Source of the DNA: Haliotis cracherodii
Lineage: Eukaryota
Assembly (NCBI RefSeq): GCF_022045235.1
Contig: NW_027266265.1
Span: 14,074,001-14,138,000, forward strand
Reading direction: 5' to 3'
Length of the DNA: 64,000 nucleotides
The notes below the pieces were generated by a model that was not told the origin of the DNA, did not search any database, and saw nothing but the letters and a program-made list of their open reading frames with translations. A program made the translations under genes and the position numbers. This document shows, one piece after another, positions 15,240 through 64,000 of the stretch. Position 1 is the stretch's first letter. Each line of letters starts with the position of its first letter.

Positions 15240-16653
15240 TTACATTTCGCGACGGACCTTTCCAACTGGCATTTCCTTTGTGAATCTCACAGAAAGGTTC
15301 CTGGAGGATCGGGTTGGTTTCTTTTCAGCATCATGTCCTCTTTTGCTGTCTTTCAGAATGGATCTTACACTGGAAGTGACCTTCAACTTGGTTTCATTTA
15401 TATCTGTGGCCTTGGCCTTGGCCAAGTTGTCACCGGAAGCAGAGAAGTCTGTTTTGACATGTGAGATCCTGCTTCGAACCTTGTCCTTTGACTTTCCTGT
15501 GTAAGGTCTTCGAGCCTTCCTTGGTTGAACTGGAGGACTGACGCTGGAGGAACTGGTCCGCTTATTGGCAGGAGTGTGACAGGTCAGAAGGGCAGTCTGG
15601 CGCTGGAGAGCTGCCAGCTCTTCCTCCAGCTTCTTCCTCTGCTCCACCTCTGTCTGCTTCTCCTTCTCCCAGTCCCCCGCCAGTCCATCTAGCGTCTGCT
15701 TCAGTTCCTGGACCTCAGCCTGCGCCATTGTGTAACTGAGACGATAGTTGTAATACTCCAGCCTATAGTCCTGCCTCTCCGACTCAACTTTCAGCCTTAA
15801 GGCGTTCTCCTCCCGAAGTTGTCGGGCCTGTCGCTCGTTCTCCTCTCTCAGCTTCTGGTTCTCATTGAAAAGGTGATCGAGAAGACTGAAGAAGATATGT
15901 CGATATTTAAGATGTTTTGGCTTAAATTTCTATCTTTCACAAATACATTATATCTATACAATTATAATGAGATATATTTTTATAATTTCATCATTTAGTA
16001 GGATTTATTCCAATATTAGACACATTGCAACCAAATGACAGCTGGGTACATCCAGAATGGACATTGCTGCTCTACAAAAGCAGGGTAGTAACGGTAAACG
16101 CATATCATCTACGCTGTGCAACGTTATAGCTTTTGATCTGTCAGAGAATAAGATCAATCGGTTCTTGATTAAAATCGTCAGCTTATGTGATCTCACATCG
16201 AAGGAAAGTCATACTAAATCGTGCCTACCTTTCCTCCAAATCTCCGACTTGAGCTTTCAGGTCCATGTACTGAACTGGAAACAAAAACGATTAACATTTT
16301 ATACAAACAATAGACTCTTTTCCATATTTTGAGGTAGGCTGACTGACATTTCCCTTAGGGTTTATATTTCCTATAGGAATACATGGACCTTGATCAGATC
16401 GGTACATCCATAGACTCCCATTGTAACTAACTGCTTCAATATTGTAATTTCTTCAAACACACAGATGGTGTTATTGTTTCGACTTCTATTTAGTTTGCAT
16501 AGCACGCGGAAAATAGGAGACTATCCTACCAAGTAAATCTTGATGCAGTTCTGGCGTTCTTGGACTACGAGGGTTAGACTGACGCTCGTCCGCCTCGAGT
16601 ATGGGGGAGAGTAGTTTCCTACTCTTCAGTCGTTCTTGTGGATACATCTTCAT
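15240..16653 (-). CDS. Array gene copy 1 (inverted), 271-aa coiled-coil protein; complement(join(15240..15885,16229..16274,16530..16653)); exon 1 ~16921-17035
   Basis: Exons of 124, 46 and 646 nt with GT/AG sites, identical in length to all other copies; open frame. Confidence 0.85.
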
Positions 16654-17029
16654 CTGTGGGATAAAAATACATCTAATATGAATTTAGGAATTTGAACATT
16701 TACATTGCAGACTGAGATTTGATCCACACAGAACTAATTTATCTATGACACAATAAATTGAAAGTGATCCAAATCTATAAAAAAAAATTCCGAAATTACA
16801 TTGTAGACTAGGTGTTAATGAATACAAATGTAATTTACGGATAAACAAACGTAGAGTCGTGAAATATAGATGTGAAAGTTGGTTAACAAACAAAATCTAT
16901 CAGAAAAAGTAATGGCTTACCTGATACTGAGATGAGGTGTAGACTTGTGCAAGTAGACACAGACCAGCAACAAATGTGAAGTTTTGCAGCAGCAACAGAT
17001 GTACGTCTGAACACCACCAAGTTGTGTCG

Positions 17030-17110
17030 GCGACTGATTGGGAACCATCAACGTCGTCATGGAACCATTCTGTGACGTCATTTCCACTGTTTCTGTCTAT
17101 GACGTCACTC
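17030..17110 (-). promoter_or_regulatory. Copy 1 core promoter: two TGACGTCA CREs plus TCAGTC initiator
   Basis: Same block as in all other copies; similarity to them collapses just upstream of the distal CRE. Confidence 0.6.
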
Positions 17111-17184
17111 ATTGTTGAGGACGCATGGTGCAGTCGGGGTCCGTTTTCTCCATATCCACCATTACCTGCGCAGGTTGACACCAG

Positions 17185-20384: not shown

Positions 20385-21575
20385 ATGAAGATGTATCCAC
20401 AAGAACGACTGAAGAGGAGGAAACTACTCTCCCCCATACTCGAGGCGGACGAGCGTCAGTCTAACCCTCGTAATTCAAGAAGGCCAGAACTACATCAAGA
20501 TTTACTTGGTAGGAAATCCTGAATTTATGATACAAAACAAATTAAATGCAAGATATCATTATTTGATGTGTTTGTTTGAAGCAATTACAGTTACATTCCA
20601 AGTATGTTTTGGTCTTTATATAACAGTGGAATCGAGTCGGGTGTTTGTACTTTTGTTTTTGTTTTCGTTTCCAGTTCAGTACATGGACCTGAAATCTCAA
20701 GTCGGAGATTTGGAGGAAAGGTAGGCACTGTTTCGTTCGATATTCATGAACGTTCTTTCGACGTGACAGGTCATAGAAACGACCATTTTAATTTAATCCA
20801 GAACCAACACAATCTTCTTCTCTGTCAGCCATGAGACTAATCGTATTAATCGTACTAATGTACATCTCATTCAAATATCGTAGATAAAATGACTTTGATA
20901 ACCGATATCTTCTGAACTGTCTTTTTCAGTCTTCTCGATCACCTTTTCAATGAGAACCAGAAGCTGAGAGAGGAGAACGAGCGACAGGCCCGACAACTCC
21001 GGGAGGAGAACACCTTAAGGCTGAAAGTTGAGTCGGAGAGACAGGACTATAGATTGGAGTATTTCAACTATCGTCTCAGTTACACAATGGCGCAGGCTGA
21101 GCTCCAGGAACTCAAGCAGACGCTAGAGGGACTGGCGGGGGACTGGGAGAAGGAGAAGCAGACAGAGATGGAGCAGAGGAAGAAGCTGGAGGAAGAGCTA
21201 GCAGCTCTCCAGCGCCAGACTGCCCCTCTGACCTGTCACACTCCTGCCAATAAGCGGACCAGTTCCTCCAGCGTCAGTCCTCCAGTTCAACCAAGGAAGG
21301 CTCGAAGACCTTACACAGGAAAGTCAAAAGACAAAGTTCCAAGCAGGATCTCACAGGTGAAGACAGACTTCTCTGCTTCCGGTGACAATTTGGCCAAGGC
21401 CAAGGCCACATATAAGAATGAAACCAAGTTGAAGGCCACTCCTGGTGTAAGATCCATTCTGAAAGACACAAAGAGAGGACAGGATGCTGAAAAGAAGCCA
21501 ACCCGATCCTCCAGGAACCTTTCTGTTAGATTCACAAAGGAAATGCCAGTTGGAAAGATCCGTCACGAAATGTAA
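20385..21575 (+). CDS. Array gene copy 2, 271 aa; join(20385..20508,20675..20720,20930..21575)
   Basis: Splices to MKMYPQERLKRRKLLSPILEADERQSNPRNSRRPELHQDLL-VQYMDLKSQVGDLEE-SLLDHLFNENQKLREENERQARQLREE...SILK...RNLSVRFTKEMPVGKIRHEM*; 816 nt, intron phases consistent. Confidence 0.88.
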
Positions 21576-22208
21576 TTACGACCCTCGCCACAAGGAACAA
21601 ACTTTATAAACAGTTTAATTGTTGGTTCTTTAATTCATATTGATTTCACACTCTTGTAATTCCGTGTGTAAAATAATCGCTGATTATCTTGTGCATGTGT
21701 CATTGTTTCTCTGTTAACATCTGGGTAATATATCACGTTACTGAAGAAACTGCTTTGTGTTTGTATTTACAACCTCATCAATTATGTGGGAAGTCAATGA
21801 TCACCTCTTAACTCTGACCAGGATGATGCATGTCCGTCATGCCCCAAAGTCGTGGGTCGATGCTCACGCTTTCTACCACTGGTTTGCCTGATCCTGTGCA
21901 CACACTGTCACGCTTCGCGGGAATAGATCACGATAGATCGGTATGGGGCGTTAATTTAGTTTGAAATTAACCTTAAATTTAATCTATGCATGGAGAAAAT
22001 TGAATGTGTCTATATTCGCTATACAGAAATTTGTAGAAGAGATATGAAATGCCTTGTTGAAAGTTGATAAAAAAACTTTCCTATTTGCCTTTAGGTTAAT
22101 ATCGAACCCTTATGCTATATAGTCATACTTATTACCCACGTGGTGAAGATACAGGACTACTTTTTTCATTCATAAGATTTCGCGAGACGTCATTCATTTT
22201 GGGTTTAG

Positions 22209-22377
22209 TGAGTGAGTGAGTGAGTTTGATTTTACGCCGCTTTTAGCAATGTTCCAGCAATATAACGGCGGGGGACACCAGAAATGGGCTTCACACATTG
22301 TACCCATGTTGGGATTCGAACCCGAGTCTTCGGTGTGACGAGCGAACGCTTTAACCACTAGGCTACCCGACCGCCCC
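22209..22377 (-). mobile_element. tRNA-derived SINE, family A
   Basis: Head GGGGCGGTCGGGTAGCCTAGTGGTTAAAGCG, B-box GGGTTCGAATCCC, (ACTC)n tail; TSD-like TTTTG(G/T)GTTTAG. Confidence 0.85.
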
Positions 22378-27431: not shown

Positions 27432-28660
27432 ATGAAGATGTATCCACAAGAACGACTGAAGAGTCGGAAACTACTCTCCCCCATACTCGAGGCGGACGAG
27501 TGTCAGTCTGACCCACGAAGTTCAAGAACGCCAGAACTGCATCAAGATTTACTTGGTAGGAGATCCTGAATTTATAATACAAAACAAATTAAATGCAAGA
27601 TAACATTACTTGATGTGTTTGTTTGAAGCAATTACAGTTACATTCCAAATATGTTTTGATCTTTATATAACAGTGGAATCGAGTCGGGTGTTTGTACTTT
27701 TGTTTTTGTTTTCGTTTCCAGTTCAGTACATGGACCTGAAATCTCAAGTCGGAGATTTGGAGGAAAGGTAGGCACAGTCTCGTTTAATATTCATGAACGT
27801 TCGTTTGGTGTGATAAGTCATAGAAATGAACATTTTAGTTTAATCTAGAACCGACACAATCTTCTTCTCTGTCAGTCACGAGACGAAATCGTAGCACATC
27901 TACCGTTACATTGTAGACCACGTGATGCCCATCCCTGATGCACACTGCCATGCAGGTGCAATGTGTCTAATGTTAGCGTACAAAATACAAAATAGAAAAA
28001 TAAGAAATGTATACCTCATTTAAATATTGACAAAATGACTTTGAGAAACGATATCTTCTAAACTATCGACATGTCTTTTTCAGTCTTCTCGATCACCTTT
28101 TCAATGAGAACCAGAAGCTGAGAGAGGAGAACGAGCGACAGGCCCGACAACTGCGGGAGGAGAACGCCTTAAGGCTGAAAGTTGAGTCGGAGAGACAGGA
28201 CTATAGGCTGGAGTATTACAACTATCGTCTCAGTTACACAATGGCGCAGGCTGAGGTCCAGGAACTGAAGCAGACGCTAGAGGGACTGGCGGGGGACTGG
28301 GAGAAGGAGAAGCAGACAGAGATGGAGCAGAAGAAGAAGCTGGAGGAAGAGCTGGCAGCTCTCCAGCGCCAGACTGCGCCTCTGACCTGTCACACTCCTG
28401 CCAATAAGCGAACCAGTTCCTCCAGCGTCAGTCCTCCAGTTCAACCAAGGAAGGCTCGAAGACCTTACACAGGAAAGTCAAAGGACAATGTTCCAAGCAG
28501 GATCTCACATGTGAAGACAGACTTCTCTGCTTCCGGTGACAACTTGGTGAAGGCCAAGGCCACAGATAAGAATGAAACCAAGTTGAAGGTCACTTCCAGT
28601 GTAAGATCCATTCTGAAAGACACAAAGAGAGGACAGGATGCTGAAAAGAAACCAACCTGA
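27432..28660 (+). CDS. Array gene copy 3, truncated to 248 aa by a CGA>TGA change; join(27432..27555,27722..27767,28084..28660). The normal stop is at 28729. Possible pseudogene.
   Basis: Intact splice sites; TGA at 28658-28660 where other copies have an Arg codon. Confidence 0.8.
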
Positions 28661-29363
28661 TCCTCCAGGAACCTTTCTGTTAGATTCACAAAGGAAATGC
28701 CAGTTGGAAAGATCCGTCACGAAATGTAATTACGACCCTCGCCACAAGGAACAAACTTTATAAACAGTTTAATTGTTGGTTCTTTAATTCATATTGATTT
28801 TACACTCTTGTAATTCCGTGTGTAAAATAATCGCTGATTATGTTGTGCGTGTGTCATTGTTTCTCTGTTAACATCTGAGTAATATATCACGTTACTGAAG
28901 AAACTGCTTTGTGTTTGTATTTACAACCTCATCAATTATGTGGGAAGTCAATGATCACCTCTTAACTCTGACCAGGATGATGCATGTCCGTCGTGCCCCA
29001 AAGTCGTGGGTCGATGCTCACACTTTCTACCACTGGTTTGCCTGCTCCCGTGCACACACTGTCACGCTTCGCGGGAATAGATCACGATAGATCGGTATGG
29101 GGAGTTAAATTAGTTTGAAATTAACCTTAAATTTAATCTATGCATGGAGAAAATTGAATGTGTCTATTTTCTCTATACAGAAATTTGTAGAAGAGATATG
29201 AAATGCCTTGTTGAAAGTTGATAAAAAAAATCAAACACTTTCCTATTTGCCTTTAGGTTAATATCGAACCCTTATGCTAAATAGTCATATTTATTACCCA
29301 CGTGGTGAAGATACAGGACTACTTTTTTCATTCATAAGATTTCGCGAGACGTCATTCATTTTG

Positions 29364-33598: not shown

Positions 33599-34887
33599 AT
33601 GAAGATGTATCCACAAGAACGACTGAAGAGTCGGAAACTACTCTCCCCCATACTCGAGGCGAACGAGCGTCAGTCTAGCCCTCGTAGTCCAAGAACGCCA
33701 GAAATGCATCAAGATTTACTTGGTAGGAGATCCTGAATTTATAATACAAAACAAATTAAATGCAAGACATCATTACTTGATGTGTTTGTTTGAAGCAATT
33801 ACAGTTACATTCCAAATATGTTTTAGTCTTTATATAACAGTGGAATCGAGTCGGGTGTTTGTACTTTTGTTTTTGTTTGTTTCCAGTTCAGTACATGGAC
33901 CTGAAATCTCAAGTGGGAGATTTGGAGGAAAGGTAGGCACAGTCTCGTTCGATATTCCTTAACGTGACAGGTCATAAAAACGACCATTTTAATTTAATCC
34001 AAAACCGACACAATCTTATTCTCTGTCAGCCATGAGACGAAATCGTAGCACGATTTACCGTTAGTTTGTAGACCACGTGATGCCCATCCCTGATGCACAC
34101 TGCCATGCAGGTGCAATGTGTCTAATGTTGGCGTACAAAATGCAAAATAGAAAAATAAGAAATGTACATCTCATTTAAATATTATTCACAAAATCACTTT
34201 GAGAAACGAAATCTTCTAAACTATCGACATGTCTTTTTCAGTCTTCTCGATCACCTTTTCAATGAGAACCAGAAGCTGAGAGAGGAGAACGAGCGACAGG
34301 CCCGACAACTCCGGGAGGAGAACGCCTTAAGGCTGAAAGTTGAGTCGGAGAGACAGGACTATAGGCTGGAGTATTTCAACTATCGTCTCAGTTACACAAT
34401 GGCGCAGGCTGAGGTCCAGGAACTGAAGCAGACGCTAGAGGGACTGGCGGGGGACTGGGAGAAGGAGAAGCAGACAGAGATGGAGCAGAGGAAGAAGCTG
34501 GAGGAAGAGCTGGCAGCTCTCCAGCGCCAGACTGCCCCTCTGACCTGTCACACTCCTGCCAATAAGCGGACCAGTTCCTCCAGCGTCAGTCCTCCAGTTC
34601 AACCAAGGAAGGCTCGAAGACCTTACACAGGAAAGTCAAAGGACAATGTTCCAAGCAGGATCTCACATGTGAAGACAGACTTCTCTGCTTCCGGTGACAA
34701 CTTGGTGAAGGCCAAGGCCACAGATAAGAATGAAACCAAGTTGAAGGTCACTTCCAGTGTTAGATCCATTCTGAAAGACACCAAGAGAGGACAGGGTGCT
34801 GAAAGGAAACCAACCAGATCCTCCAGGAACCTTTCTGTTAGATTCACAAAGGAAATGCCAGTTGGAAAGATCCGTCGCGAAATGTAA
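33599..34887 (+). CDS. Array gene copy 4, 271 aa; join(33599..33722,33887..33932,34242..34887)
   Basis: Same exon lengths and splice sites as other copies; open frame. Confidence 0.88.
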
Positions 34888-36195: not shown

Positions 36196-39100
36196 CGCCC
36201 GACAGTCTGTCTGCCATAAGTGTTTCCCCAGTCTGTCTGCCATAACTGTGTCTCAAGTCTGTCTGCCATAAGTGTGTCCCCAGTCTCTCAGACATGTGTG
36301 TCCCCAGTCTGTCTGTCATAAGTGTGTCCCCAGTCTGTCTGATATAAGTGTGTCACCAGTCTGTCAGACATGTGTGTCCCCAGTCTGTCCGACATAAGTG
36401 TGTCCCCAGTCTGTCTGATATAAGTGTGTCACCAGTCTGTCTGACATGTGTGTCCCCAGTCTGTCCGACATAAGTGTGTCCCCAGTCTGTCTGTCATAAG
36501 TGTGTCCCCAGTCTGTCCGACATAAGTGTGTCCACAGTCTGTCTGCCATAAGTGTGTCTCCAGTCTGTCCGACATAAGTGTGTCCCCAGTCTGTCCGACA
36601 TAAGTGTGTCCCCAGTCTGTCTGCCATAAGTGTGTCACCAGTCTGTCAGACGTGTGTCCCCAGTCTGTCCGACATAAGTGTGTCCCCAGTCTGTCTGATA
36701 TAAGTGTGTCACCAGTCTGTCTGACATGTGTGTCCCCAGTCTGTCCGACATAAGTGTGTCCCCAGTCTGTCTGTCATAAGTGTGTCCCCAGTCTGTCCGA
36801 CATAAGTGTGTCCACAGTCTATCTGCCATAAGTGTGTCTCCAGTCTGTCCGACATAAGTGTGTCCCCAGTCTGTCCGACATAAGTGTGTCCCCAGTCTGT
36901 CCTACATAAGTGTGTCACCAATCTGTCCGACATAAGTGTATCCCCAGTCCGTCTGTCATAAGTGTGTCCCCATTCTGTCTGTCATAAGTGTGTCCCCAGT
37001 CTGTCCGACATAAGTGTGTCCCCAGTCTGTCTGACATAAGTGTGTCACCAGTCTGTGTGCCAGAAGTGTGTCCCCAGTCTGTCTGTCATGAGTGTGTCCC
37101 CTGTGTGTCTGACATAAGTGTGTCCCCACTCTGTCTGACATACGTGTCTCCCCAGTCTGTCTGTCATGAGTGTGTCCCCTGTCTGTTTCTCATATGTGTG
37201 TCCCCAGTCTGTGTGACATACGTGTGTCCACAGTCTGTCTGCCATAAGTGTGTCTCCAGTCTGTCCGACATAAGTGTGTCCCCAGTCTGTCCGACATAAG
37301 TGTGTCCCCAGTCTGTCCTACATAAGTGTGTCACCAATCTGTCCGACATAAGTGTATCCCCAGTCCGTCTGTCATAAGTGTGTCCCCATTCTGTCTGTCA
37401 TAAGTGTGTCCCCAGTCTGTCTGATATAAGTGTGTCACCAGTCTGTCAGACATGTGTGTCCCCAGTCTGTCCGACATAAGTGTGTCCCCAGTCTGTCTGA
37501 TATAAGTGTGTCACCAGTCTGTCTGACATGTGTGTCCCCAGTCTGTCCGACATAAGTGTGTCCCCAGTCTGTCCTACATAAGTGTGTCCCCAGTCTGTCC
37601 GACATAAGTGTGTCCACAGTCTGTCTGCCATAAGTGTGTCTCCAGTCTGTCCGACATAAGTGTGTCCCCAGTCTGTCCGACATAAGTGTGTCCCCAGTCT
37701 GTCTGCCATAAGTGTGTCACCAGTCTGTCAGACGTGTGTCCCCAGTCTGTCCGACATAAGTGTGTCCCCAGTCTGTCTGATATAAGTGTGTCACCAGTCT
37801 GTCTGACATGTGTGTCCCCAGTCTGTCCGACATAAGTGTGTCCCCAGTCTGTCTGTCATAAGTGTGTCCCCAGTCTGTCCGACATAAGTGTGTCCACAGT
37901 CTGTCTGCCATAAGTGTGTCTCCAGTCTGTCCGACATAAGTGTGTCCCCAGTCTGTCCGACATAAGTGTGTCCCCAGTCTGTCCTACATAAGTGGGTCAC
38001 CAATCTGTCCGACATAAGTGTATCCCCAGTCCGTCTGTCATAAGTGTGTCCCCATTCTGTCTGTCATAAGTGTGTCCCCAGTCTGTCCGACATAAGTGTG
38101 TCCCCAGTCTGTCTGACATAAGTGTGTCACCAGTCTGTCCGACAAAAGTGTGTCCCCAGTCTGTCCGACAAAAGTGTGTCCCCAGTCTGTCCGACATAAG
38201 TGTGTCCCCAGTCTGTCTGCAATAAGTGTGTCCCCAGTCTGTGTGCCAGAAGTGTGTCCCCAGTCTGTCTGTCATGAGTGTGTCCCCTGTGTGTCTGACA
38301 TAAGTGTGTCCCCACTCTGTCTGACATACGTGTCTCCCCAGTCTGTCTGTCATGAGTGTGTCCCCTGTCTGTTTCTCATATGTGTGTCCCCAGTCTGTGT
38401 GACATACGTGTGTCCTCAGTCTGTCTATCATAAGTGTGTCCCCACTCTGTCTGTCATACGTGTGTCCCAAGTCTGTCTGACATAAGTGTGTCCCCAGGCT
38501 GTCCGACTTAAGTGTGTCCCCAGTCTGTCTGACATAAGTGTGTCACCAGTCTGTCCGACAAAAGTGTGTCCCCAGTCTGTCTGCAATAAGTGTGTCCCCA
38601 GTCTGTCTGCCATAAGTATGTCCCCAGTCTGTGTGCCAGAAGTGTGTCCCCAGTCTGTGTGCCATGAGTGTGTCCCCTGTGTGTCTGACATAAGTGTGTC
38701 CCCAGGCTGTCCGACTTAAGTGTGTCCCCAGTCTGTCTGATATAAGTGTGTTCCCAGTCTGTCTGATATAAGTGTGTCCCCAGTCTGTCCTACATAAGTG
38801 TGTCACCAATCTGTCCGACATAAGTGTATCCCCAGTCCGTCTGTCATAAGTGTGTCCCCATTCTGTCTGTCATAAGTGTGTCCCCAGTCTGTCCGACATA
38901 AGTGTGTCCCCAGTCTGTCCGACAAAAGTGTGTCCCCAGTCTGTCTGCAATAAGTTTGTCCCCAGTCTGTCTGCCATAAGTGTGTCTCCAGTCTGAGTGT
39001 CAGAAGTGTGTCCCCAGTCTGTCTGCCACAAGTGTGTCCCCAGTATGTGTGTCATAAGTGTGTCTCCAGTCTGTCTGACAATAAGCGTGTCCCCAGTCTG

Positions 39101-40128
39101 TCTGACATGAGCGTGTCCCCAGTTTGTCTGACATGAGCGTGTCCCCAGTCTGTCTGCCACAAGTGTGTCCCCAGTCTGTCTGACATAAGTGTGTCCCCAG
39201 TTGGGAACTTCTCCAAACCTATTCTACAGAATCTGTGTGACATACGTGTGTCCTCAGTCTGTCTATCATAAGTGTGTCCCCACTCTGTCTGTCATACGTG
39301 TGTCCCAAGTCTGTCTGACATAAGTGTGTTCCCAGTCTGTCCGACATAAGTGTGTCCCCAGGCTGTCTGACATGAGCGTGTCCCCAGTTTGTCTGACATA
39401 AGCGTGTCCCCAGTCTGTCTGACATAAGCGTGTCCCCAGTCTGTCTGACATAAGTGTGTCCCCAGTTTGTCTTACATTAACGTGTCCCCAGTTTGTCTTA
39501 CATTAACGTGTCCCCGGTCTATCTGCCATAAGTGTGTCCTCAGTCTGACTGACATTAATGTGTCCCCAGTCTATCTGCCATAAGTGTGTCCCCAGTCTAT
39601 CTGCCATAAGTGTGTCCCCAGTCTATCCGACACTCTCTGACATAGGTGTGTCCCCAGTCTGTCTGTCATGAGTGTGTCCCCTGTGTGTCTGACATAAGTG
39701 TGTCCCCACTCTGTCCGACATAAGTGTATCCCCAGTCCGTCTGTCATAAGTGTGTCCCCATTCTGTCTGTCATAAGTGTGTCCCCAGTCTGTCCGACATA
39801 AGTGTGTCCCCAGTCTGTCCGACATAAGTGTGTCCCCAGTCTGTCCGACAAAAGTGTGTCCCCAGTCTGTCTGCAATAAGTTTGTCCCCAGTCTGTCTGC
39901 CATAAGTGTGTCCCCAGTCTGTGTGCCAGAAGTGTGTCCCCAGTCTGTCTGCCACAAGTGTGTCCCCAGTATGTGTGTCATAAGTGTGTCTCCAGTCTCT
40001 CTGACAATAAGCGTGTCCCCAGTCTGTCTGACATGAGCGTGTCCCCAGTTTGTCTGACATGAGCGTGTCCCCAGTCTGTCTGCCACAAGTGTGTCCCCAG
40101 TCTGTCTGACATAAGTGTGTCCCCAGTT
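36196..40128. repeat. 26-bp satellite, ~150 units, with kb-scale higher-order duplications
   Basis: Direct reading. Near-identical ORF translations are offset by 1082 bp (36364/37446, 36635/37717). Confidence 0.95.
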
Positions 40129-41416: not shown

Positions 41417-42538
41417 ATGAAGATGTATCAACAAGAACGATTGAAGAGTAGGAAACTACTCTCCCCCATACTCGAGGCGAACGAGCGTCAGTCTAGCCCT
41501 CGTAGTCCAAGAACGCAAGAACTGCATCAAGATTTACTTGGTAGGAGATCCTGAATTTATGATACAAACAAATTGAATGCAAGACATCATCACTTGATGT
41601 GTTTGTTTGAAGCAATTACAGTTACATTCCAAGTATGTCTTTATATAACAGTGGAATCGAGTCGGGTGTTTGTACTTTTGTTTTTGTTTTCGTTTCCAGT
41701 TCAGTACATGGACCTGAAATCTCAAGTCGGAGATTTGGAGGAAAGGTAGGCACAGTCTCGTTTAATATTCATGAACGTTCGTCTAAAATATACAAAAAGG
41801 AAAAACAAGAAATGTGCATCTCATTCAAATATCATAGATAAAATGACTTTGAGAAATGATATCTTCTAAACTATCGACATATCTTTTTTCAGTCTTCTCG
41901 ATCACCTTTTCAATGAGAATCAGAAGATGAGAGAGGAGAACGAGCGACAGGCCCGACAACTCCGGGAGGAGAACGCCTTAAGGCTGAAAGTTGAGTCGGA
42001 GAGACAGGACTATAGGCTGGAGTATTTCAACTATCGTCTCAGTTACACAATGGCGCAGGCTGAGGTCCAGGAACTGAAGCAGACGCTAGAGGGACTGGCG
42101 GGGGACTGGGAGAAGGAGAAGCAGACAGAGATGGAGCAGAGGAAGAAGCTGGAGGAAGAGCTGGCAGCTCTCCAGCGCCAGACTGCCCCTCTGACCTGTC
42201 ACACTCCTGCCAATAAGCGGACCAGTTCCTCCAGCGTCAGTCCTCCAGTTCAACCAAGGAAGGCTCGAAGACCTTACACAGGAAAGTCAAAGGACAATGT
42301 TCCAAGCAGGATCTCACATGTGAAGACAGACTTCTCTGCTTCCGGTGACAACTTGGTGAAGGCCAAGGCCACAGATAAGAATGAAACCAAGTTGAAGGTC
42401 ACTTCCAGTGTAAGATCCATTCTGAAAGACAGCAAGCGAGGACAGGTTGCTGAAAAAAACCCAACGCGATCTTCCAGGAACCTTTCTGTGAGATTCACAA
42501 AGGAAATGCCAGTTGGAAAGACCCGTCACGAAATGTAA
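41417..42538 (+). CDS. Array gene copy 5, 271 aa; join(41417..41540,41700..41745,41893..42538)
   Basis: Same exon structure; open frame. Confidence 0.88.
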
Positions 42539-47536: not shown

Positions 47537-48659
47537 ATGAAGATGTATCCACAAGAACGACTGAAGAGTAGGAAACTACTCTCCCCCATACTCGAGGCGA
47601 ACGAGCGTCAGTCTAACCCTCGTAGTCCACGAACGCAAGAACTGCATCAAGATTTACTTGGTAGGAGATCCTGAATTTATGATACAAAACAAATTAAATG
47701 CAAGACATCATCACTTGATGTGTTTGTTTGAAGCAATTACAGTTACATTCCAAGTATGTCTTTATATTACAGTTGAATCGAGTCGGGTGTTTGTACTTTT
47801 GTTTTTGTTTTCGTTTCCAGTTCAGTACATGGACCTGAAATCTCAAGTCGGAGATTTGGAGGAAAGGTAGGCACAGTCTCGTTTAATATTCATGAACGTT
47901 CGTCTAAAATATACAAAAAGGAAAAACAAGAAACGTGCATCTCATTCAAATATCATAGATAAAATGACTTTGAGAAACGATATCTTCTAAACTATCGACA
48001 TATCTTTTTTCAGTCTTCTCGATCACCTTTTCAATGAGAACCAGAAGCTGAGAGAGGAGAACGAGCGACAGGCCCGACAACTTCGGGAGGACAACGCCTT
48101 AAGGCTGAAAGTTGAGTCGGAGAGGCAGGACTATAGGCTGGAGTATTTCAACTACCGTCTCAGTTACACAATGGCGCAGGCTGAGGTCCAGGAACTGAAG
48201 CAGACGCTAGAGGCACTGGCGGGGGACTGGGAGAAGGAGAAGCAGAAAGAGATGGAGCAGAGGAAGAAGATGGAGGAAGAGCTGGCAGCTCTCCAGCGCA
48301 AGACTGCCCCTCTGACCTGTCACACTCCTACCAATAAGCGGACCAGTTCCTCCAGCGTCAGTCCTCCAGTTCAACCAAGGAAGGCTCGAAGACCTTACAC
48401 AGGAAAGTCAAAGGACAAGGTTCCAAGCAGGATCTCACATGTGAAGACAGACTTCTCTGCTTCCGGTGACAATTTGGTGAAGGCCAAGGCCACAGATAAG
48501 AATGAAAGCAAGTTGAAGGTCACTTCTGGTGTAAGATCCATTCTGAAAGACACCAAGAGGGGACAGGATGCTGAAAAGAAGCCAACCCGGTCCTCCAGGA
48601 ACCTTTCTGTTAGATTCACAAAGGAAATGCCAGTTGGAAAGATCCGTCACGAAATGTAA
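47537..48659 (+). CDS. Array gene copy 6, 271 aa; join(47537..47660,47821..47866,48014..48659)
   Basis: Same exon structure; open frame. Confidence 0.88.
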
Positions 48660-53415: not shown

Positions 53416-54235
53416 ATTTTCCAAGTGTTTTATTCACTTGTGATCTTAACTGTTCCACCTCGAGTATCGAACCGTGAACTTTACTATTATAAAATATGGA
53501 CGCGTATTAGATGTGAGTGAAACACTAGGTTTTCTAAATGTAAAGTAATTATGGAATTAAAGATGCATCCTGACGTCTTTAACTGCTTTGACAGGAGACT
53601 TAATCTGTGCGTCTTCAACACCCATAATTTGTTATGTGTCGTGAAGAGACGGAGCCCAGCTTACATAAAGCCGTACCGAGCATGGTAAACACTGTCAGTG
53701 ACGTCATAGACAGAAACAGTGGAAATGACGTCACAGAATGGTTCCATGACGACATTGATGGTTCCCACTCAGTCGCCGACACAACTTGGTGGTGTTCAGA
53801 CGTACATCTGTTGCTGCTGCAAAACTTCACATTTGTTGCTGGTCTGTGTCTACTTGCACAAGTCTACACCTCATCTCAGTATTAGGTAAGCAATGTCAGT
53901 TTAACTCCTACAGTTGGTTTACTTTTACTGATAGCCTTTGTTTGCTAACCCTCGTTCACATCTATATTCACTTGTCTGAAATTCTTTATCAGTAAATTAC
54001 TTTTGTATTCATTAACACACATTCTCCAATGTAATTAGGGAACTCAAATGTTTCTGTCTTTTTCTGATAGATTTTCACGCACATATGTAACGTGTAGATT
54101 GAATCACATTGCCTATTTGTCTGATGTTTTAGTTATTGTTTTATCCATAAACTAGTTCTATTTGGATCAAATCTCAGTCTGCAATGTAAATGCTCCAATT
54201 CCTAAATTCATATTAGATATATTTTTATCCCACAG

Positions 54236-55364
54236 ATGAAGATGTATCCACAAGAACGACTGAAGAGTCGGAAACTACTCTCCCCCATACTCGAGGCGGA
54301 CGAGCGTCAGTCTGACCCACGAAGTTCAAGAACGCCAGAACTGCATCAAGATTTACTTGGTAGGAGATCCTGAATTTATAATACAAAACAAATTAAATGC
54401 AAGATATCATTACTTGATGTGTTTGTTTGAAGAAAATACAGTTACATTCCGAGTATGTTTTAGTCTTTATTTAACAGTTGAATCGAGTCGGGTGTTTGTA
54501 CTTTTGTTTTTGTTTTCGTTTCCAGTTCAGTACATGGACCTGAAATCTCAAGTCGGAGATTTGGAGGAAAGGTAGGCACAGTCTCGTTTAATATTCATGA
54601 ACGTTCGTCTAAAATATACAAAAAGGAAAAATAAGAAATGTACATCTCATTCAAATATCATAGATAAAATGACTTTGAGAAACGATATCTTCTAAACTAT
54701 CGACATATCTTTTTTCAGTCTTCTCGATCACCTTTTCAATGAGAATCAGAAGCTGAGAGAGGAGAACGAGCGACAGGCCCGACAACTTCGGGAGGACAAC
54801 GCCTTAAGGCTGAAAGTTGAGTCGGAGAGGCAGGACTATAGGCTGGAGTATTTCAACTACCGTCTCAGTTACACAATGGCGCAGGCTGAGCTCCAGGAAC
54901 TGAAACAGACGCTAGAGGGACTGGCGGGGGACTGGGAGAAGGAGAAGCAGACAGAGATGGAGCAGAGGAAGAAGCTGGAGGAAGAGCTGGCAGCTCTCCA
55001 GCGCCAGACTGCCCCTCTGACCTGTCACACTCCTACCAATAAGCGGACCAGTTCCTCCAGCGTCAGTCCTCCAGTTCAACCAAGGAAGGCTCGAAGACCT
55101 TACACAGGAAAGTCAAAGGACAAAGTTCCAAGCAGGATCTCACATGTGAAGACAGACTTCTCTGCTTCCGGTGACAACTTGGTGAAGGCCAAGGCCACAG
55201 ATAAGAATGAAACCAAGTTGAAGGTCACTCCTGGTGTAAGATCCATTCTGAAAGACACCAAGAGAGGACAGGGTGCTGAAAAGAAGCCAACCCGGTCCTC
55301 CAGGAACCTTTCTGTTAGATTCACAAAGGAAATGCCAGTTGGAAAGACCCGTCACGAAATGTAA
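54236..55364 (+). CDS. Array gene copy 7, 271 aa; join(54236..54359,54526..54571,54719..55364)
   Basis: Same exon structure; open frame. Confidence 0.88.
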
Positions 55365-56804: not shown

Positions 56805-57472
56805 CCCCCAGTCTTTCTGCCATAAGTGTGTCCCCAGTCCGTCTGCCATAAGTGAGTCCCAAGTCTGTCTGACATAAATGTGTCCCCACTCTGTCTGACA
56901 TAAGCGTGTCCCAAGTCTGTCTGAAAAACGTGTGTCCCCAGTCTGTCCGACTTAAGTGTGTCCCCAGTCTGTCTGACATAAGTCTGTCCCAAGTCTGTCC
57001 CCAGTCTGTCTGACATACGTGTGTTCCCAGTCTGTCTGACAAACGTGTGTCCCCAGTCTGTCTGACTTAAGTGTGTCTCCAATCTGTCTGACACAAGTGT
57101 GTCTCCAGTCTGTCTGACATAAGTGTGTTCCCAGTCTGTATGACATAAGTGTGCCCACAGTCTGTCTGACATACGTGTGTCCCCGGTTAATCCGACATAA
57201 GTGTGTCTCCAGTCTGTCCGGCATAAGCGTGTCTCCAGTCTGTCCGACTTAAGTGTTTCCCCAGTCTGTCTGACATCCGTGTGTCTCCAGTCTGTCCGAC
57301 TTAAGTGTGTCCCCAGTCTGTCTGACATAAGTGTGTCCCCAGTCTGTCTGACATAAGTGTGTCCCCATCTGTCTGACATAAGTGTGTCCCCAGTTTGTCT
57401 GACATAAGCGTGTCACCAGTCTGTCTGACATAAGTGTGTCCTCAGTCGATCTTACATAAGTGTGTCCCCAGT
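56805..57472. repeat. 26-bp satellite, ~26 units
   Basis: Direct reading. Confidence 0.95.
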
Positions 57473-57938
57473 TCGGAACTTCTCCAAACCTATTCTACAG
57501 AATCGAGCAGCATCTTTAGTATGGATCATCTTGTATCAGACAGCACGTTAACTCGAGATGAATGTCACGTCTATTACAACCTGGAGTGTTAGTGAAAACG
57601 TTACCGCACTAGAAGAGCTTCCTGTCAACTATTACACCAGAAACTCAACAGTGAATATTTGATGACAAATGTTGACTGTGAACAACTTACTGACATATAT
57701 TTGAAAGCTATGAATTTGTTTTGAATCAATACGGACTGTTGTGTGTAATATAACACAAACAATATGAGAAAAAGACACGGACATAATATTTTTACGACGA
57801 ATCACAGGCTTGCTCTGGTATTCAGTGGAGAGTGCACCCAAACAAAAGGGACACAACTCCGCAGTGACTAATTTCAGTCCAGTGTAACCCTGCAGCCATG
57901 ATGGAATTTGTGGATGATAGCGATTCTTTTTCCAAGTG

Positions 57939-58109
57939 CGTAAGTGAGTGAGTGAGTATGGTTTTACGCAGCTTTTAGCAATATTCCAGCAATATCACGG
58001 CGGGGGACACCAGAAATGAGCTTCACACATTGTACCCATGTCGGGAATCGAACCCGGGTCTTCGGCGTGACGAGTGAACGCTTTAACCACCAGGCTACCC
58101 CGCCGTCCC
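57939..58109 (-). mobile_element. Family A SINE upstream of copy 8
   Basis: TSD TTTTCCAAGTG. Confidence 0.85.
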
Positions 58110-58783
58110 ATTTTCCAAGTGTTTTATTCACTTGTGATCTTAACTGTTCCACCTCGAGTTTCAAACTGTGAAATATATTATTATGAAATATCGACGCGTG
58201 TTAGGTGTGAGTGAAGCGCTTGGTTTTGCTAATGTAAAGTAATCATGGAATTAAAGATGCACCCTGACGTCTTTTACAGCTTTGACAGGAGACTTAATCT
58301 GTGCGTCTTCAACACGCATAATTTGTTATGTGTCGTGAAGAGACGGAGCCCAGCTTACATAAAGCCGTATCGTGCATGGTGAACACTGCCAGTGACGTCA
58401 TAGACAGAAACAGTGGAAATGACGTCACAGAATGGTTCCATGACGACGTTGATGGTTCCCACTCAGTCGCCGACACAACTTGGTAGTGTTCAGACGTACA
58501 TCTGTTGCTGCTGCAAAACTTCACATTTGTTGCTGATCTGTATCTACTTGCACAAGTCTACACCTCATCTCAGTATTAGGTAAGCAATGCCAGTCTAACT
58601 CCTACAGTTGGTTTACTTTTACTGATAGCGTTTGTTTCCTAACCCTCGTTCACATCTATATTTCACGGCTCTGAAATTCTTTATCGATAAATTACCTTTG
58701 TATTAAATGACACTCCGTCTCCATTGTAATTACGGAACTCAAATAATTCCTAAATTCAAATGTGATTATGTTTTGTCCCACAG

Positions 58784-59907
58784 ATGAAGATGTATCCACA
58801 AGAACGACTGAAGAGTAGGAAACTACTCTCCCCCATACTCGAGGCGAACGAGCGTCAGTCTAGCCCTCGTAGTCCAAGAACGCCAGAACTGCATCAAGAT
58901 TTACTTGGTAGGAGATCCTGAATTTATGATACAAAACAAATTAAATGCAAGACATCATCACTTGATGTGTTTGTTTGAAGCAATTACAGTTACATTCCAA
59001 GTATGTCTTTATATAACAGTGGAATCGAGTCGGGTGTTTGTACTTTTGTTTTTGTTTTCGTTTCCAGTTCAGTATATGGACCTGAAATCTCAAGTCGGAG
59101 ATTTGGAGGAAAGGTAGGCACAGTCTCGTTTAATATTCATGAACGTTCGTCTAAAATATACAAAAAGGAAAAACAAGAAATACTGCATCTCATTCAAATA
59201 TCATAGATAAAATGACTTTGAGAAACGATATCTTCTAAACTATCGACATATCTTTTTTCAGTCTTCTCGATCACCTTTTCAATGAGAATCAGAAGCTGAG
59301 AGAGGAGAACGAGCGACAGGCCCGACAACTCCGGGAGGAGAACGCCTTAAGGCTGAAAGTTGAGGCGGAGAGGCAGGACTATAGGCTGGAGTATTACAAC
59401 TATCGTCTCAGTTACACAATGGCACAGGCTGAGCTCCAGGAACTGAAGCAGACGCTAGAGGGACTGGCGGGCGACTGGGAGAAGGAGAAGCAGACAGAGA
59501 TGGAGCAGAGGAAGAAGCTGGAGGAAGAGCTGGCAGCTCTCCAGCGCCAGACTGCCCCTCTGACCTGTCATACTCCTGCCAATAAGCGGACCAGTTCCTC
59601 CAGCGTCGGTCCTCCAATTCAACCAAGGAAGGCTCGAAGACCTTACACAGGAAAGTCAAAGGACAAAGTTCAAAGCAAGATCTCACATGTCAAGACATAC
59701 TTGTCTGCTTCCGGTGACAGCTTGGTGAAGGCCAAGGCCACAGATAAGAATGAAAGCAAGTTGAAGGTCACTTCCAGTGTAAGATCCATTCTGAAAGACA
59801 GCAAGAGAGGACAGGTTGCTGAAAAAAACCCAACGCGATCTTCAAGGAACCTTTCTGTGAGATTCACAAAGGAAATGCCAGTTGGAAAGACCCGTCACGA
59901 AATGTAA
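58784..59907 (+). CDS. Array gene copy 8, 271 aa; join(58784..58907,59068..59113,59262..59907)
   Basis: Same exon structure; open frame. Confidence 0.88.
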
Positions 59908-61431
59908 TTACGACCCTCGCCACAAGGAACAAACTGTATAAACTGTTTAATTGTTGGTTCTTTAATTCATATTGATTTCACATTCTTGTAATTCCGTGTG
60001 TAAAATAATCGCTGACTATGTTGTGCATGTGTCAGTGTTTCTCTGTTAACATCTGGGTAATATATAACGTTACTGAAGAAACTGCTTTGTGTTTGTATTT
60101 ACAACCTCATCAATTATGTGGGAAGTCAATGATCACCTCTCAACTCTGACCAGGATGATGCATGTCAGTCATGCCCCAAAGTCGTGGGTCGATGCTCACA
60201 CTTTCTACCACTGGTTTGCCTGCTCCTGTGCACACACTGTCACGCTACGCGTCACGATACTAAATCCGTACGTCACACGTGTTTCGCATTCGTGACTAAA
60301 TGTCACGCTTCGCGGGAATAGATCACGATAGATGAAAGTTGATGAAGAAAACAAATACTTTCATATTTACCTTTAGGTTTATATCGAACACTAAAACTAA
60401 AAGGTCATTTATATTTCTTCTTACCGGGTAATTAGCTTCAGGACGCAATTCGTTACATGTTCAATGAGTGAGTATACACCCTGACACAAGGTAGACAACT
60501 CTGTTCCCCTTATTTCGTGGAGGGACATGAAATGTTGGAAACATGATTTCGTTCCCCAAATTTCTTCTTTCTTTTCCTTCAAAATAGCATGACATTCCCT
60601 CAGATTAACATTTGTTCGGTGGGAACATGGAACCAGGTTGTTTTCTACATAGATAGAAAATAATATATGAGATCCTATACACTGTGTCGTAATAACTATA
60701 TAAATGGTCATGAAATCATTTTGAAGTGAATTAATAAGTCCCCATTTAGTTACTGACATGGGTGTATGGAGTGAAGAATACCGAGTCCGTCATTGACCCT
60801 TTGAACCTTCACCCGCCTTTGTGACCGATGTTTGTTAACCAGTTTTCATACATGCGCATATGGCATGCATATCTACGTTATAGATATCTTTGCAAATGTA
60901 GCGTATACACGTAATTTTACAAGGATATGCCCAGTGCAGCTATATCTCAAGACACGCGAGTGTGCCGCCACTCTGTCTGACGTGATGTGCCACTGTACTG
61001 TGCCTCCAATCTGTATAAATATAGTGTGCCCCCACCTGTCTATAGTAATTGTGCCCCCAGTTTGACGTAATGTGCCACTGTACTGTGCCTCCAATCTGTA
61101 TAAATATAGTGTGCCCCCACCTGTCTATAGTAATTGTGCCCCCAGTTTGACGTAATATGCCACTGTACTGTGCCTCCAATCTGTATAAATATAGTGTGCC
61201 CCACCTGTCTATAGTAATTGCCCCCAGTTTGTCTGACGTAATGTGCACAAGTCCAGTTTTTCTATATGACTATTTTGCAGGAATATTTACGCTTCGCATA
61301 TCGGTTCAAATGCAGCGTAAAAACGTATTTTTTAATTTATCTGTCGTATATAAAAGTATCTCAAGAAACACCAGGGTATTATAATTCTGTCTGACGTAAT
61401 GTGCAGCCATTTTCTCTACATTAAATGCGCC

Positions 61432-63361
61432 CCCCAGTCTTTCTGCCATAAGTGTGTCCCCAGTCCGTCTGCCATAAGTGAGTCCCAAGTCTGTCTGACA
61501 TAAATGTGTCCCCACTCTGTCTGACATAAGCGTGTCCCCAGTCTGTCTGACTTAAGTGTGTCCCCAGTCTGTCTGACTTAAGTGTGTCCCCAATCGATGT
61601 GTCATAGGTGTGCCCACAATCTGTCTGTCATAAGTGTGTCCCAAGTGTGTCCGACATAAGTGTGTACCCAGGCTGTCCGACTTAAGTGTGTCCCCAGTCT
61701 GTCTGTCATAAGTGTGTCCCCAGTCTGTCTGTCATAAGCGTATCCCCAGTCTGTCTGCCATAAGTGTGTCCCCAGTCTGTCAGACATAAGTGTGTCCCCA
61801 GTCTGTCTGTCATAAGCGTATCCCCAGTCTATCTGCTAAGTGTGTCCTCAGTCTGTCTGACATAAGTGTGTCCCCAGTTTGTCTGACATAAGTGTGTCCC
61901 CAGTCTGTCTGCCATAAGTCTGTCCCCAGTCTGTGTGCCAGAAGTGTGTCCCCAGTCTGTCTGTCATAAGTGTGTCCCCAGTCTGTCTGACATAAGCGTG
62001 TCCCCAGTTTGTCTTACATTAACGTGTTCCCGGTCTATCTGCCATAAGTGTGTCCTCAGTCTGTCTGACATAAATGTGCCCCAAGTCTATCTGACATAAG
62101 TGTGTCCCCAGTCTGTCAGTCATACGTGTGTCCCCAGTCTGTCTGACATAAATGTGTCCCCAGTCTGTCTGACATAAGTGTGTCCTCAGTCTGTCTGTCA
62201 TAAGTATCCCCAGTCTGTCTGACATAAGTGTGTCCTCAGTCTGTCTGTCATAAGTATCCCCAGTCTGTCTGACATAAGTGTGTCCCCAGTCTGTCTGACA
62301 TAAGGGTGTCCCCAGTCTGTCAGTCATACGTGTGTCCCCAGTCTGTCTGACATAAATGTGTCCCCAGTCTGTCTGACATAAGTGTGTCCTCAGTCTGTCT
62401 GTCATAAGTATCCCCAGTCTGTCTGACATAAGTGTGTCCTCAGTCTGTCTGTCTTAAGTATCCCCAGTCTGTCTGACATAAGTGTGTCCCCAGTCTATCT
62501 GACATAAGGGTGTCCCCAGTCTGTCAGTCATACGTGTGTCCCCAGTCTGTCTGACATAAATGTGTCCCCAGTCTGTCTGACATAAGTGTGTCCTCAGTCT
62601 GTCTGTCATAAGTATCCCCAGTCTGTCTGACATAAGTGTGTCCTCAGTCTGTCTGTCATAAGTATCCCCAGTCTGTCTGACATAAGTGTGTCCCCAGTCT
62701 GTCTGACATAAGTGTGTCCTCAGTCTGTCTGTCATAAGTATCCCCAGTCTGTCTGTCATAAGTATCCCCAGTCTGTCTGACATAAGTGTGTCCCCAGTCT
62801 GTCTGACATAAGGGTGTCCCCAGTCTGTCTGTTATGAGTGTGTCCCCAGGCTGTCTGTCATGAGTGTGTCACCAGTCTGTCTGTCATAAGTATCCCAGTC
62901 TGTCTGACATAAGTGTGTCCCCAGTCTGTCTGTCATAAGTGTGTCCCAAGTCTGTCTGTCATAAGTGTGTCCCCAGTATTTTTGACATACGTGTGTCCCA
63001 AGTCTGTTTGACATACGTGTGTCCCCAGTCTGTCTGACATACGTGTGTCCCCAGTCTGTCTGACATACGTGTGTGCCCAGTCTTTCTGCCATAAGTGTGT
63101 CCCCAGTCTGTCTGCCATACGTGTGTCCCCCGTCTGTCTGACATACGTGTGTCCTCAGTCTGTCTGTCATAAATGTGTCCCAATCTGTCTGACAGGCGTG
63201 TGTCCTCAAGCTGTCTGTAATAAGTGTGTCCCCAGTCTTTCTGTCATGAGTGTGTCCCCAGTTCCATCATAAGTTTGTCCCCAGTCTCTGACATAAATGT
63301 GTCCCCAATCTGTCTGACATACGTGTGTCACCAATCTGTCTGCCATACGTGTGTCCCCAGT
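61432..63361. repeat. 26-bp satellite, ~75 units, including a local expansion of shortened (~22-bp) variants
   Basis: Direct reading; CATAAGTATCCCCAG variants cluster at 62200-62780. Confidence 0.95.
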
Positions 63362-64000
63362 TGGGAACTTCTCTAAACCTATTCTACAGAATCGAGCAGC
63401 ATATTTAGTGCGGATCATCTTATGTCAGACAGCACGTTAACTCGAGATGAATGTCACGTCTATTACAACCTGGAGCGTTAGGTGAAAAGTTAACGCACTA
63501 GAAGAGCTTCCTGTCAACTATTATACCAGAAACTCAACAGTGAATATTTGATGACAAATGTTGACTGTGAACAACTTACTGACATATATGTGAACGCTAT
63601 GGATTTGTTTTGAATCAATACTGGCTGTTGTGTGTAATATAACACAAACAATATGAGAAAAAGACACGGACATAATATTTTTATGACGAATCACAGGCTT
63701 GCTCTGGTATTCAGTGGAGAGTGCACCCAAACAAAAGGGACACAACTCCGCATTGACTAATTTCAGTCCAGTGTAACCCTGCAGCCATGATGGAATTTGT
63801 GGATGATAGCGATTCTTTTTCCAAGTGACGAAGTGAGTGAGTGAGTATGGTTTTACGCAGCTTTTAGCAATATTCCAGCAATATCACGGCGGGGGACACC
63901 AGAAATGAGCTTCACACATTGTACCCATGTCGGGAATCGAACCCGGGTCTTCGGCGTGACGAGCGAACGCTTTAACCACCAGGCTACCCCACAGTCCCAT
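63362..64000 (+). other. Upstream region of a presumed ninth copy (array continues past the window), including a family A SINE at ~63828-63998 (-)
   Basis: Co-linear with the regions upstream of copies 5 and 8. Confidence 0.8.

What the first reader, a model, noticed from the sequence alone, without database searches (positions are those of the whole stretch)
15240..64000. Tandemly amplified, unrecognised 271-aa gene that looks like a dual PP2A-B56/PP1 phosphatase scaffold
Seen: at least 8 copies (1 inverted, 7 direct; a 9th unit starts at the window edge) of a gene with coding exons of 124, 46 and 646 nt. Seven are full length. The spliced protein has LSPILE at residues 15-20, a long predicted coiled coil, and a K/R/S-rich tail with SILK (232-235) and LSVRF (254-258). 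These motifs are invariant at codon level in all copies while neighbouring residues vary. Established: LxxIxE recruits PP2A-B56 and SILK/RVxF recruit PP1; the two docking types occur together in cell-division regulators (RepoMan, or the KNL1-BubR1 pair). Inference: a lineage-specific phosphatase adaptor amplified for dosage or through genetic conflict, plausibly in meiosis or spermatogenesis. I cannot assign it to a known family.
Basis: partly seen in the sequence, partly recalled or inferred. Interest (0 to 1): 0.85.

Follow-up and report, generated by a model that had tools for sequence, protein, structure and literature searches.

The report
Abalone-only amplified coiled-coil phosphatase-docking gene
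A gene found only in abalones, repeated at least 23 times on one black-abalone chromosome, is spliced and transcribed and encodes a paired-helix protein whose best-conserved short motif is the classic docking site for the phosphatase PP2A-B56; binding is not shown, and the proposed second docking site for PP1 is weaker and confined to this subfamily.

Summary
The window (Haliotis cracherodii chromosome C2, 14.07-14.14 Mb) carries 8 copies of a gene with coding exons of 124, 46 and 646 nt. Seven are intact; one has a premature stop. The array runs on to 16 copies, and a second array of 7 lies 2.1 Mb away.

RefSeq already models it as a 271-aa "uncharacterized protein", so it is not unrecognised. 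Contigs from four probable RNA runs of three coded organisms carry the predicted junctions and reveal an extra non-coding 5' exon. Copies evolve under purifying selection (dN/dS 0.33).

The family has at least 40 loci in this genome. Searches of 5.8 and 1.84 billion proteins found it only in Haliotis, and it has no Pfam or PDB relative.

The predicted structure is one long helix (34-154), modelled as a parallel dimer, between disordered ends. LSP[IV]xE is present in every full-length member of all six subgroups. This makes PP2A-B56 docking the best reading, though it is untested.

SILK and SVRF occur only in the amplified subfamily, and SVRF lacks the basic residues of the RVxF consensus. A dual PP2A/PP1 scaffold is therefore only partly supported. 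A role in meiosis or genetic conflict was not tested.

The parts
15240..16653 (-). Copy 1 (inverted), intact. Exons 16653-16530, 16274-16229, 15885-15240.
   Evidence: Its introns barely align with those of the direct copies, while its exons are 92-96% identical.
20385..21575 (+). Copy 2, intact. Exons 20385-20508, 20675-20720, 20930-21575.
27432..28729 (+). Copy 3. Exons 27432-27555, 27722-27767, 28084-28729. A premature TGA at 28658-28660 removes the last 25 residues, including SVRF.
   Evidence: RefSeq models a 248-aa product (P0029).
33599..34887 (+). Copy 4, intact. Exons 33599-33722, 33887-33932, 34242-34887.
41417..42538 (+). Copy 5, intact. Exons 41417-41540, 41700-41745, 41893-42538.
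47537..48659 (+). Copy 6, intact. Exons 47537-47660, 47821-47866, 48014-48659.
54236..55364 (+). Copy 7, intact. Exons 54236-54359, 54526-54571, 54719-55364. Product identical to RefSeq P0001 (XP_071084294.1).
58237..58579 (+). Non-coding 5' exon of copy 8. Its start is uncertain (58237 to about 58382). Donor GT at 58580; intron 58580-58783.
   Evidence: An RNA contig joins 58237-58577 directly to 58782 (record 20). Sequence. The exon is present in the other units.
58784..59907 (+). Copy 8, intact. Exons 58784-58907, 59068-59113, 59262-59907. LSPILE at 58826-58843, SILK at 59785-59796, LSVRF at 59851-59865.
   Evidence: The 59113|59262 junction appears in contigs of 4 runs, and the exon 1-2-3 joined form in records 11 and 20.
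58393..58450 (+). Conserved promoter/5' UTR module with two TGACGTCA palindromes (CRE-type) and a TGACGACG, shared with paralogs on other chromosomes.
63437..64000 (+). Start of the ninth unit, cut by the window edge.
   Evidence: Its exon 3 lies at G000:C2:14139151-14139792.
36203..40127 (.). 26-bp satellite between units. Other arrays are at 31910-32464, 43759-46459, 56806-57472 and 61432-63361. Their length accounts for most of the variation in unit length.
   Evidence: All of the roughly 100 listed genome matches of the 26-mer (of 205 in total) lie in this array.

Best explanation
What is shown: this is a transcribed, protein-coding gene family restricted to Haliotis. Tandem duplication, probably by unequal exchange between the 26-bp satellite blocks that separate units, has amplified one subfamily to 16 + 7 copies on black-abalone chromosome C2.

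What is modelled: each product is a 271-aa protein with a roughly 120-residue helix, predicted to form a parallel, in-register homodimer. A short disordered basic N-terminus and a 117-residue disordered K/R/S/T-rich tail flank the helix.

What is inferred:
- The N-terminal LSP[IV]xE is the family's hallmark and most likely docks in the conserved LxxIxE pocket of the B56 subunit of PP2A. The Ser-Pro at motif positions 2-3 would let a proline-directed kinase strengthen binding, as in BubR1.
- The dimer would then present two B56 docking sites. It could act as an adaptor that brings PP2A-B56 to whatever the basic tail binds, or, at high dosage, as a competitor for the B56 pocket.
- In the amplified subfamily only, the last 42 residues are under strong constraint and carry SILK, a 19-residue spacer and a degenerate SVRF. 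This may add PP1 docking, and is the weaker inference.
For: Real gene:
- Exon sizes and AG..GT sites are kept in 23 of 23 copies; 21 are intact.
- dN/dS is 0.33 overall, 0.24 in the coiled-coil part of exon 3 (residues 58-157) and 0.20 in residues 230-271, against 0.67 in the mid tail.
- Spliced contigs occur in 4 runs from 3 coded organisms.
- RefSeq models are identical.

Structure:
- AlphaFold2 gives helix 34-154 with pLDDT above 90. Residues 1-33 and 155-271 score low, about 37-58 in 10-residue blocks.
- The homodimer model scores 0.44 against a best control of 0.00, with i-to-i contacts from 55 to 154. The mark was reached by 21 of 30 solved homodimers and 0 of 23 monomers.

B56 motif:
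- LSP[IV]xE is present in every full-length member of six subgroups, including paralogs about 31% identical.
- It is the second best conserved 6-residue window of 140 in the disordered parts.
- Acidic or Ser-Pro residues follow it.
- The motif definition and its phospho-enhancement are given in PMC6363451.
- Two B56 genes and PP1-type genes exist in this genome.

PP1 part:
- SVRF is invariant in the subfamily across 4 species.
- SILK lies N-terminal to it, in the same order as in inhibitor-2 (PMC11536154).
Against: - No binding test was possible. Both partners are multi-exon genes, and joined models could not be submitted.
- L..[IVL].E alone is common by chance.
- The conserved island could serve another partner, or simply be a phosphorylation site.
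- RNLSVRF fails the RVxF consensus because it has no K/R at -1 or -2.
- SILK is followed by Asp and is SIVK or SIMK in two species.
- Both PP1-type motifs are absent from five of six subgroups.
- The tissue and timing of expression are unknown.
Confidence: 0.5

Rival explanations
1. A dual PP2A-B56/PP1 scaffold. One dimer holds both phosphatases at once, like RepoMan or the KNL1-BubR1 pair, in cell division or gametogenesis.
For: All three motifs lie in disordered regions. The C-terminal 42 residues show dN/dS 0.20 with the highest synonymous divergence. SVRF is invariant across four species in this subfamily, and the SILK-to-SVRF order and spacing are plausible.
Against: SVRF lacks the basic residues of RVxF. 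SILK is not conserved outside the Californian species. The PP1 motifs are absent from the other five subgroups. There is no homology to RepoMan, KNL1 or BubR1, and no tissue or binding data.
Confidence: 0.25
2. A structural or nucleic-acid/cytoskeleton-binding coiled-coil protein. The conserved islands (LSPIxE, RPYTGK) would be kinase sites or ligands for partners other than phosphatases, and the resemblance to phosphatase motifs would be coincidental.
For: The best conserved disordered island is RPYTG, which is not a phosphatase motif. The tail is strongly basic, with pI 10.9. The D/E subgroups read SPIP, which also fits an SxIP-type pattern (the SxIP pattern is from my own knowledge).
Against: The exact five specified residues L-S-P-I/V-x-E are kept while the flanks change completely. 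SxIP does not fit the other subgroups.
Confidence: 0.2
3. Non-functional ORFs carried along by a satellite or transposon-driven amplification.
For: Units alternate with a 26-bp satellite. A tRNA-derived SINE sits upstream of most units, with copies in the fifth to ninth units and divergent copies near the second to fourth. One copy in each array is broken.
Against: dN/dS is well below 1. Splice sites are intact in 23 of 23 copies. Spliced RNA contigs exist. Orthologues are conserved in four species, with a shared promoter module among dispersed paralogs. No transposon domain was found.
Confidence: 0.03

Closest known systems
LxxIxE / LSPIxE-containing PP2A-B56 interactors (BubR1 KARD, RepoMan/CDCA2, Kif4A, RacGAP1)
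   Same: The six-residue motif is identical in form, with Ser-Pro at positions 2-3 and acidic or phosphorylatable residues after it, in a disordered region. RepoMan also carries a PP1 site.
   Different: There is no sequence homology to any of them. This is a small dimeric coiled-coil protein restricted to one gastropod genus and present in dozens of copies. Binding is untested.
PP1 regulators with SILK plus RVxF (inhibitor-2, KNL1, RIF1, CSRNP)
   Same: A SILK-type motif lies N-terminal to a V-x-F motif, separated by about 20 disordered residues.
   Different: The basic residues before V are missing (L-S-V-R-F). SILK is followed by Asp and varies between species. The pair exists in one subfamily only.
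Shugoshin (coiled-coil PP2A-B56 recruiter)
   Same: A homodimeric coiled coil associated with PP2A-B56, with a basic C-terminal region.
   Different: Shugoshin binds B56 through the coiled coil itself and has no LxxIxE (PMC6363451). No match to any Shugoshin Pfam model appeared at E up to 10.
Ampliconic lineage-specific gene families (mouse Slx/Sly, Drosophila Stellate)
   Same: A young, tandemly amplified, lineage-restricted coding gene, with ongoing copy turnover and exon-biased homogenisation.
   Different: There is no evidence here for sex linkage, germline expression or conflict. This comparison rests on my own knowledge only.

Membership tests
PP2A-B56 docking motif class (LxxIxE / LSPIxE) | Sequence L-x-x-[I/V/L]-x-E | tested here: met
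   LSPILE or LSPVLE in all 23 copies. LSP[IV]xE in all full-length members of six subgroups, and FSPIIE in one.
PP2A-B56 docking motif class (LxxIxE / LSPIxE) | Located in an intrinsically disordered, accessible region | tested here: met
   Residues 1-33 have pLDDT 47-49 and no secondary structure.
PP2A-B56 docking motif class (LxxIxE / LSPIxE) | Motif conserved while its flanks diverge | tested here: met
   Mean top-residue fraction 0.94, rank 2 of 140 windows. Kept in paralogs about 31% identical.
PP2A-B56 docking motif class (LxxIxE / LSPIxE) | Motif-dependent binding to the B56 pocket | not testable with these tools
   The B56 genes are multi-exon, so no unspliced reference could be handed to complex prediction.
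PP1 RVxF motif | (K/R)-(K/R)-(V/I)-{FIMYDP}-(F/W) (PMC6363451) | tested here: not met
   The sequence is L-S-V-R-F. V, x and F fit, but the two basic positions are L and S. The regex [RK].{0,1}[VIL][^P][FW] finds no hit in the tail.
PP1 RVxF motif | Conservation among orthologues | tested here: inconclusive
   SVRF is invariant in the 271-aa subfamily of 4 species (one array-2 copy has SVSF), but absent from the other subgroups.
PP1 SILK motif | [G/S]-I-L-[K/R], N-terminal to RVxF | tested here: inconclusive
   SILK in H. cracherodii and H. rufescens; SIVK or SIMK in H. rubra and H. asinina. The order relative to SVRF is right.
RepoMan, KNL1, BubR1, Shugoshin or any Pfam family | Detectable sequence homology | tested here: not met
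   No Pfam hit above cut-off for six subgroup representatives. No PDB sequence hit below E 0.04. Every homologue found is a Haliotis protein whose name is 'uncharacterized' or an automatic '-like' label.
Transposon-borne ORF | Transposase, RT or other mobile-element domain, or shared flanks at dispersed copies | tested here: not met
   No such domain was found. Dispersed paralogs share only the exons and a 60-70 nt promoter module.

The most novel reading that the evidence does not exclude
An abalone-specific ampliconic family of dimeric proteins has evolved to capture the conserved B56 pocket of PP2A. In the most amplified branch it also captures PP1. It would act as a dosage-dependent decoy or adaptor in germ cells, and its copy number would be driven by genetic conflict over meiosis or gamete function.
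Probability: 0.1. Interest if true: 0.8.

Novelty: new variant of a known kind. Interest (0 to 1): 0.45.

Why it matters
If the LSPIxE island really docks PP2A-B56, this would be a clear case of a young, genus-restricted gene family built around an ancient phosphatase-docking motif. It would show how lineage-specific regulators can plug into a universal signalling enzyme. The family expanded to dozens of copies and one branch later gained PP1-like motifs, so it offers a natural series for studying how short linear motifs are gained. It also gives abalone biology a candidate regulator that can be tested directly with peptides and motif mutants. If binding fails, it remains an ordinary, uncharacterised lineage-specific coiled-coil family.

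Tried and rejected
No result:
- Pfam on the exons and on six subgroup representatives gave nothing above cut-off.
- PDB sequence and profile searches gave nothing meaningful.
- The ESM Atlas gave only unnamed clusters and no structure.
- The profile search of 1.84 billion representatives and two word-indexed searches of 5.8 billion proteins found only Haliotis proteins.
- Rfam found only a tRNA.
- Paper searches for the RefSeq locus names, and for Haliotis with B56, found nothing relevant.
- The upstream 14 kb holds no convincing gene.

Not possible:
- Complex prediction with B56 or PP1c. Both are multi-exon genes with no intronless copy.
- The spliced product of this gene was never joined for a search. 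Exons were searched by reference, and the identical RefSeq protein returned by the search served as the full-length form.
- Run labels were coded, so tissue could not be read.

Rejected: the idea of a transposon-borne or dead ORF (see rivals). Also rejected: using within-array invariance of the motifs as evidence, because the array is too young.
Full report
**Observation**

The window is G000:C2:14074001-14138000. C2 is 59,495,813 bases long, which matches the Haliotis cracherodii chromosome that carries RefSeq protein P0001.

ORF listing and motif scans show eight copies of a large exon and of an upstream exon encoding MKMYPQERLKSRKLLSPILE.... Aligning the exons of copy 8 to every unit gives exons of 124, 46 and 646 nt with AG..GT borders in all eight window copies. 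The same holds in the eight further copies beyond the window edge. The seven copies of a second array at C2:16.23-16.26 Mb differ only in exon 3, which is 640 nt in five of them and 628 and 657 nt in the other two.

In the first array 15 of 16 copies are intact; copy 3 has a TGA 25 codons before the end. In the second array 6 of 7 are intact; one has a frameshift.

Units are separated by a 26-bp satellite of variable length. All of the roughly 100 listed genome matches of the satellite unit (of 205 in total) lie in this array. A ninth unit begins at 63437.

**The gene is real and already modelled**

The copy at 54236-55364 encodes exactly P0001 (XP_071084294.1, 271 aa, "uncharacterized protein"). 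Its 90% cluster holds 23 sequences from H. cracherodii and H. rufescens.

Contigs of four runs, guessed to be RNA and from three coded organisms, were laid on 57600-60900. All four carry the junction 59113|59262 (GT..AG). Two contigs join exon 1, 45-46 further letters (the size of exon 2) and exon 3. One of them also joins an upstream non-coding exon (58237-58577/9) directly to the acceptor in front of the ATG at 58784. The gene therefore has four exons.

I did not send a joined spliced model to any search tool. Exons were searched by reference, and the identical database protein served as the full-length form.

**Selection**

Among the 16 copies of array 1, mean dN is 0.029 and mean dS 0.090, a ratio of 0.33.

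| Region | dN/dS |
|---|---|
| Exon 1 | 0.47 |
| Exon 2 | 0.09 |
| Coiled coil | 0.24 |
| Tail 158-229 | 0.67 |
| Last 42 residues | 0.20 (highest synonymous divergence) |

The three motifs are invariant at the amino-acid level in all 16 copies, and LSVRF has one synonymous variant. In so young an array that invariance is weak evidence.

The inverted copy has exons 92-96% identical to the direct copies, but its introns barely align. This points to exon-biased homogenisation or constraint.

**Family and range**

The genome holds at least 40 related loci:
- the two C2 arrays;
- singletons or pairs on C1, C3, C12 and C78;
- tandem clusters on C7 and C56 whose products are about 31% identical.

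A word-indexed search of 5.8 billion proteins, a profile search of 1.84 billion representatives and a second search with a family-wide profile returned only Haliotis proteins, from H. cracherodii, H. rufescens, H. rubra and H. asinina. No Pfam family or PDB sequence matches any subgroup.

In a tree of the exon-3 region, H. rufescens copies interleave with H. cracherodii array-1 copies, and one H. rufescens copy is sister to array 2. Five copies (copy 8 and L010-L013) form a near-identical recent block. Amplification therefore began before these two species split and is still going on. Most of the forks behind this have moderate support; only the recent five-copy block and the array-2 clade are strongly supported.

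**Architecture**

AlphaFold2 with the family alignment gives a single helix, 34-154, with pLDDT above 90. Confidence is low in residues 1-33 and 155-271, about 37-58 in 10-residue blocks.

A two-copy model of residues 30-160 scored 0.44 against a best control of 0.00. The runs agree in at least 97% of contacts, and the partner's pLDDT is 83. The mark was reached by 21 of 30 solved homodimers and 0 of 23 monomers in the tool's calibration, with weaker figures for eukaryotes. Contacts are i-to-i from residue 55 to 154, so the model is a parallel, in-register dimer. The model supports dimerisation but does not demonstrate it.

The tail has pI 10.9.

**Motifs**

LSP[IV]xE occurs in every full-length member of all six subgroups, and one H. 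asinina copy has FSPIIE. Examples are RKLLSPILEADE, RLSPVLEEPD and VLSPIPESP / VLSPIPELPEE. Models that lack it are N-terminally truncated or annotated differently.

In the alignment of subgroups A-C it is the second best conserved six-residue window of 140 in the disordered parts. It fits the LxxIxE definition, and phosphorylation within and after the motif is known to strengthen B56 binding (PMC6363451). The genome has two B56 genes.

SILK and LSVRF, by contrast, rank 89 of 144 and 119 of 142 family-wide and exist only in the 271/267-aa subfamily. RNLSVRF lacks the two basic residues of the RVxF consensus. SILK is SIVK or SIMK in two species. The SILK-linker-RVxF order matches known regulators (PMC11536154).

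The PP1 reading is therefore possible but clearly weaker. The strong constraint on the last 42 residues shows that they matter for something.

**Mechanism proposed**

I propose a dimeric coiled coil that presents two phospho-tunable B56 docking sites. It would act as an adaptor or a competitor, and a basic tail would determine what it binds. The amplified branch may have gained PP1 docking. The dimer is modelled; the docking and the adaptor/competitor role are inferred. No tissue, binding or phenotype data exist.

**Other points**
- A second conserved island, PPVQP(K/R)KAxRPYTGKSK, is the best conserved disordered window and remains unexplained.
- A 60-70 nt module with two TGACGTCA palindromes lies in the promoter/5' exon and is shared with paralogs on C1, C3 and C12.

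**Verdict**

The family is novel as a family, but the proposed mechanism is of a known kind.

Noticed in passing
window 58393-58450 (and the same place in other units; L003:2250-2307, L004:2656-2696, L005:1112-1179): A conserved non-coding module with two perfect CRE-type palindromes (TGACGTCA) and a TGACGACG lies in the promoter/5' exon. Paralog groups whose exons are only about 67% identical share it, which suggests common CREB/ATF-type regulation of the family.
   Followed up: partly
window 57943-58100 (copies at 40577-40743, 63833-63999, 26435-26601, 53250-53416, 49300-49465, 22208-22368, 46730-46863): A tRNA-derived SINE-like element on the minus strand lies about 140-290 nt upstream of the 5' exon of copy 8, with copies in several other units. 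It is hugely abundant in the RNA contig sets (summed depth above 10^6).
   Followed up: partly
P0001 residues 174-190 (window 59611-59661 in copy 8): PPVQP(K/R)KAxRPYTGKSK is the best conserved stretch of the disordered tail across the whole family, including the paralogs about 31% identical. No known motif could be assigned.
   Followed up: partly
window 15141-17133 compared with the direct copies: The inverted copy has exons 92-96% identical to the direct copies, but its introns barely align and are longer. dS (about 0.09) is far below intron divergence. This suggests exon-limited gene conversion or constraint on exonic nucleotides.
   Followed up: partly
window 11793-11866 (-): A tRNA-Thr (CGT) gene, found by both ARAGORN and Rfam.
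   Followed up: no
window 13011-13188, 14048-14492, 14652-15049, 1503-1918: Other short tandem arrays (periods 25, 23, 32/64 and 103 nt) lie just upstream of the gene array. The long ORFs they create are artefacts of the repeats.
   Followed up: no
G000:C7:33349773-33375088 and G000:C56:10543169-10614992: The distant paralogs (about 305-323 aa) are themselves in tandem clusters of five or more, so tandem amplification recurs across the family.
   Followed up: partly
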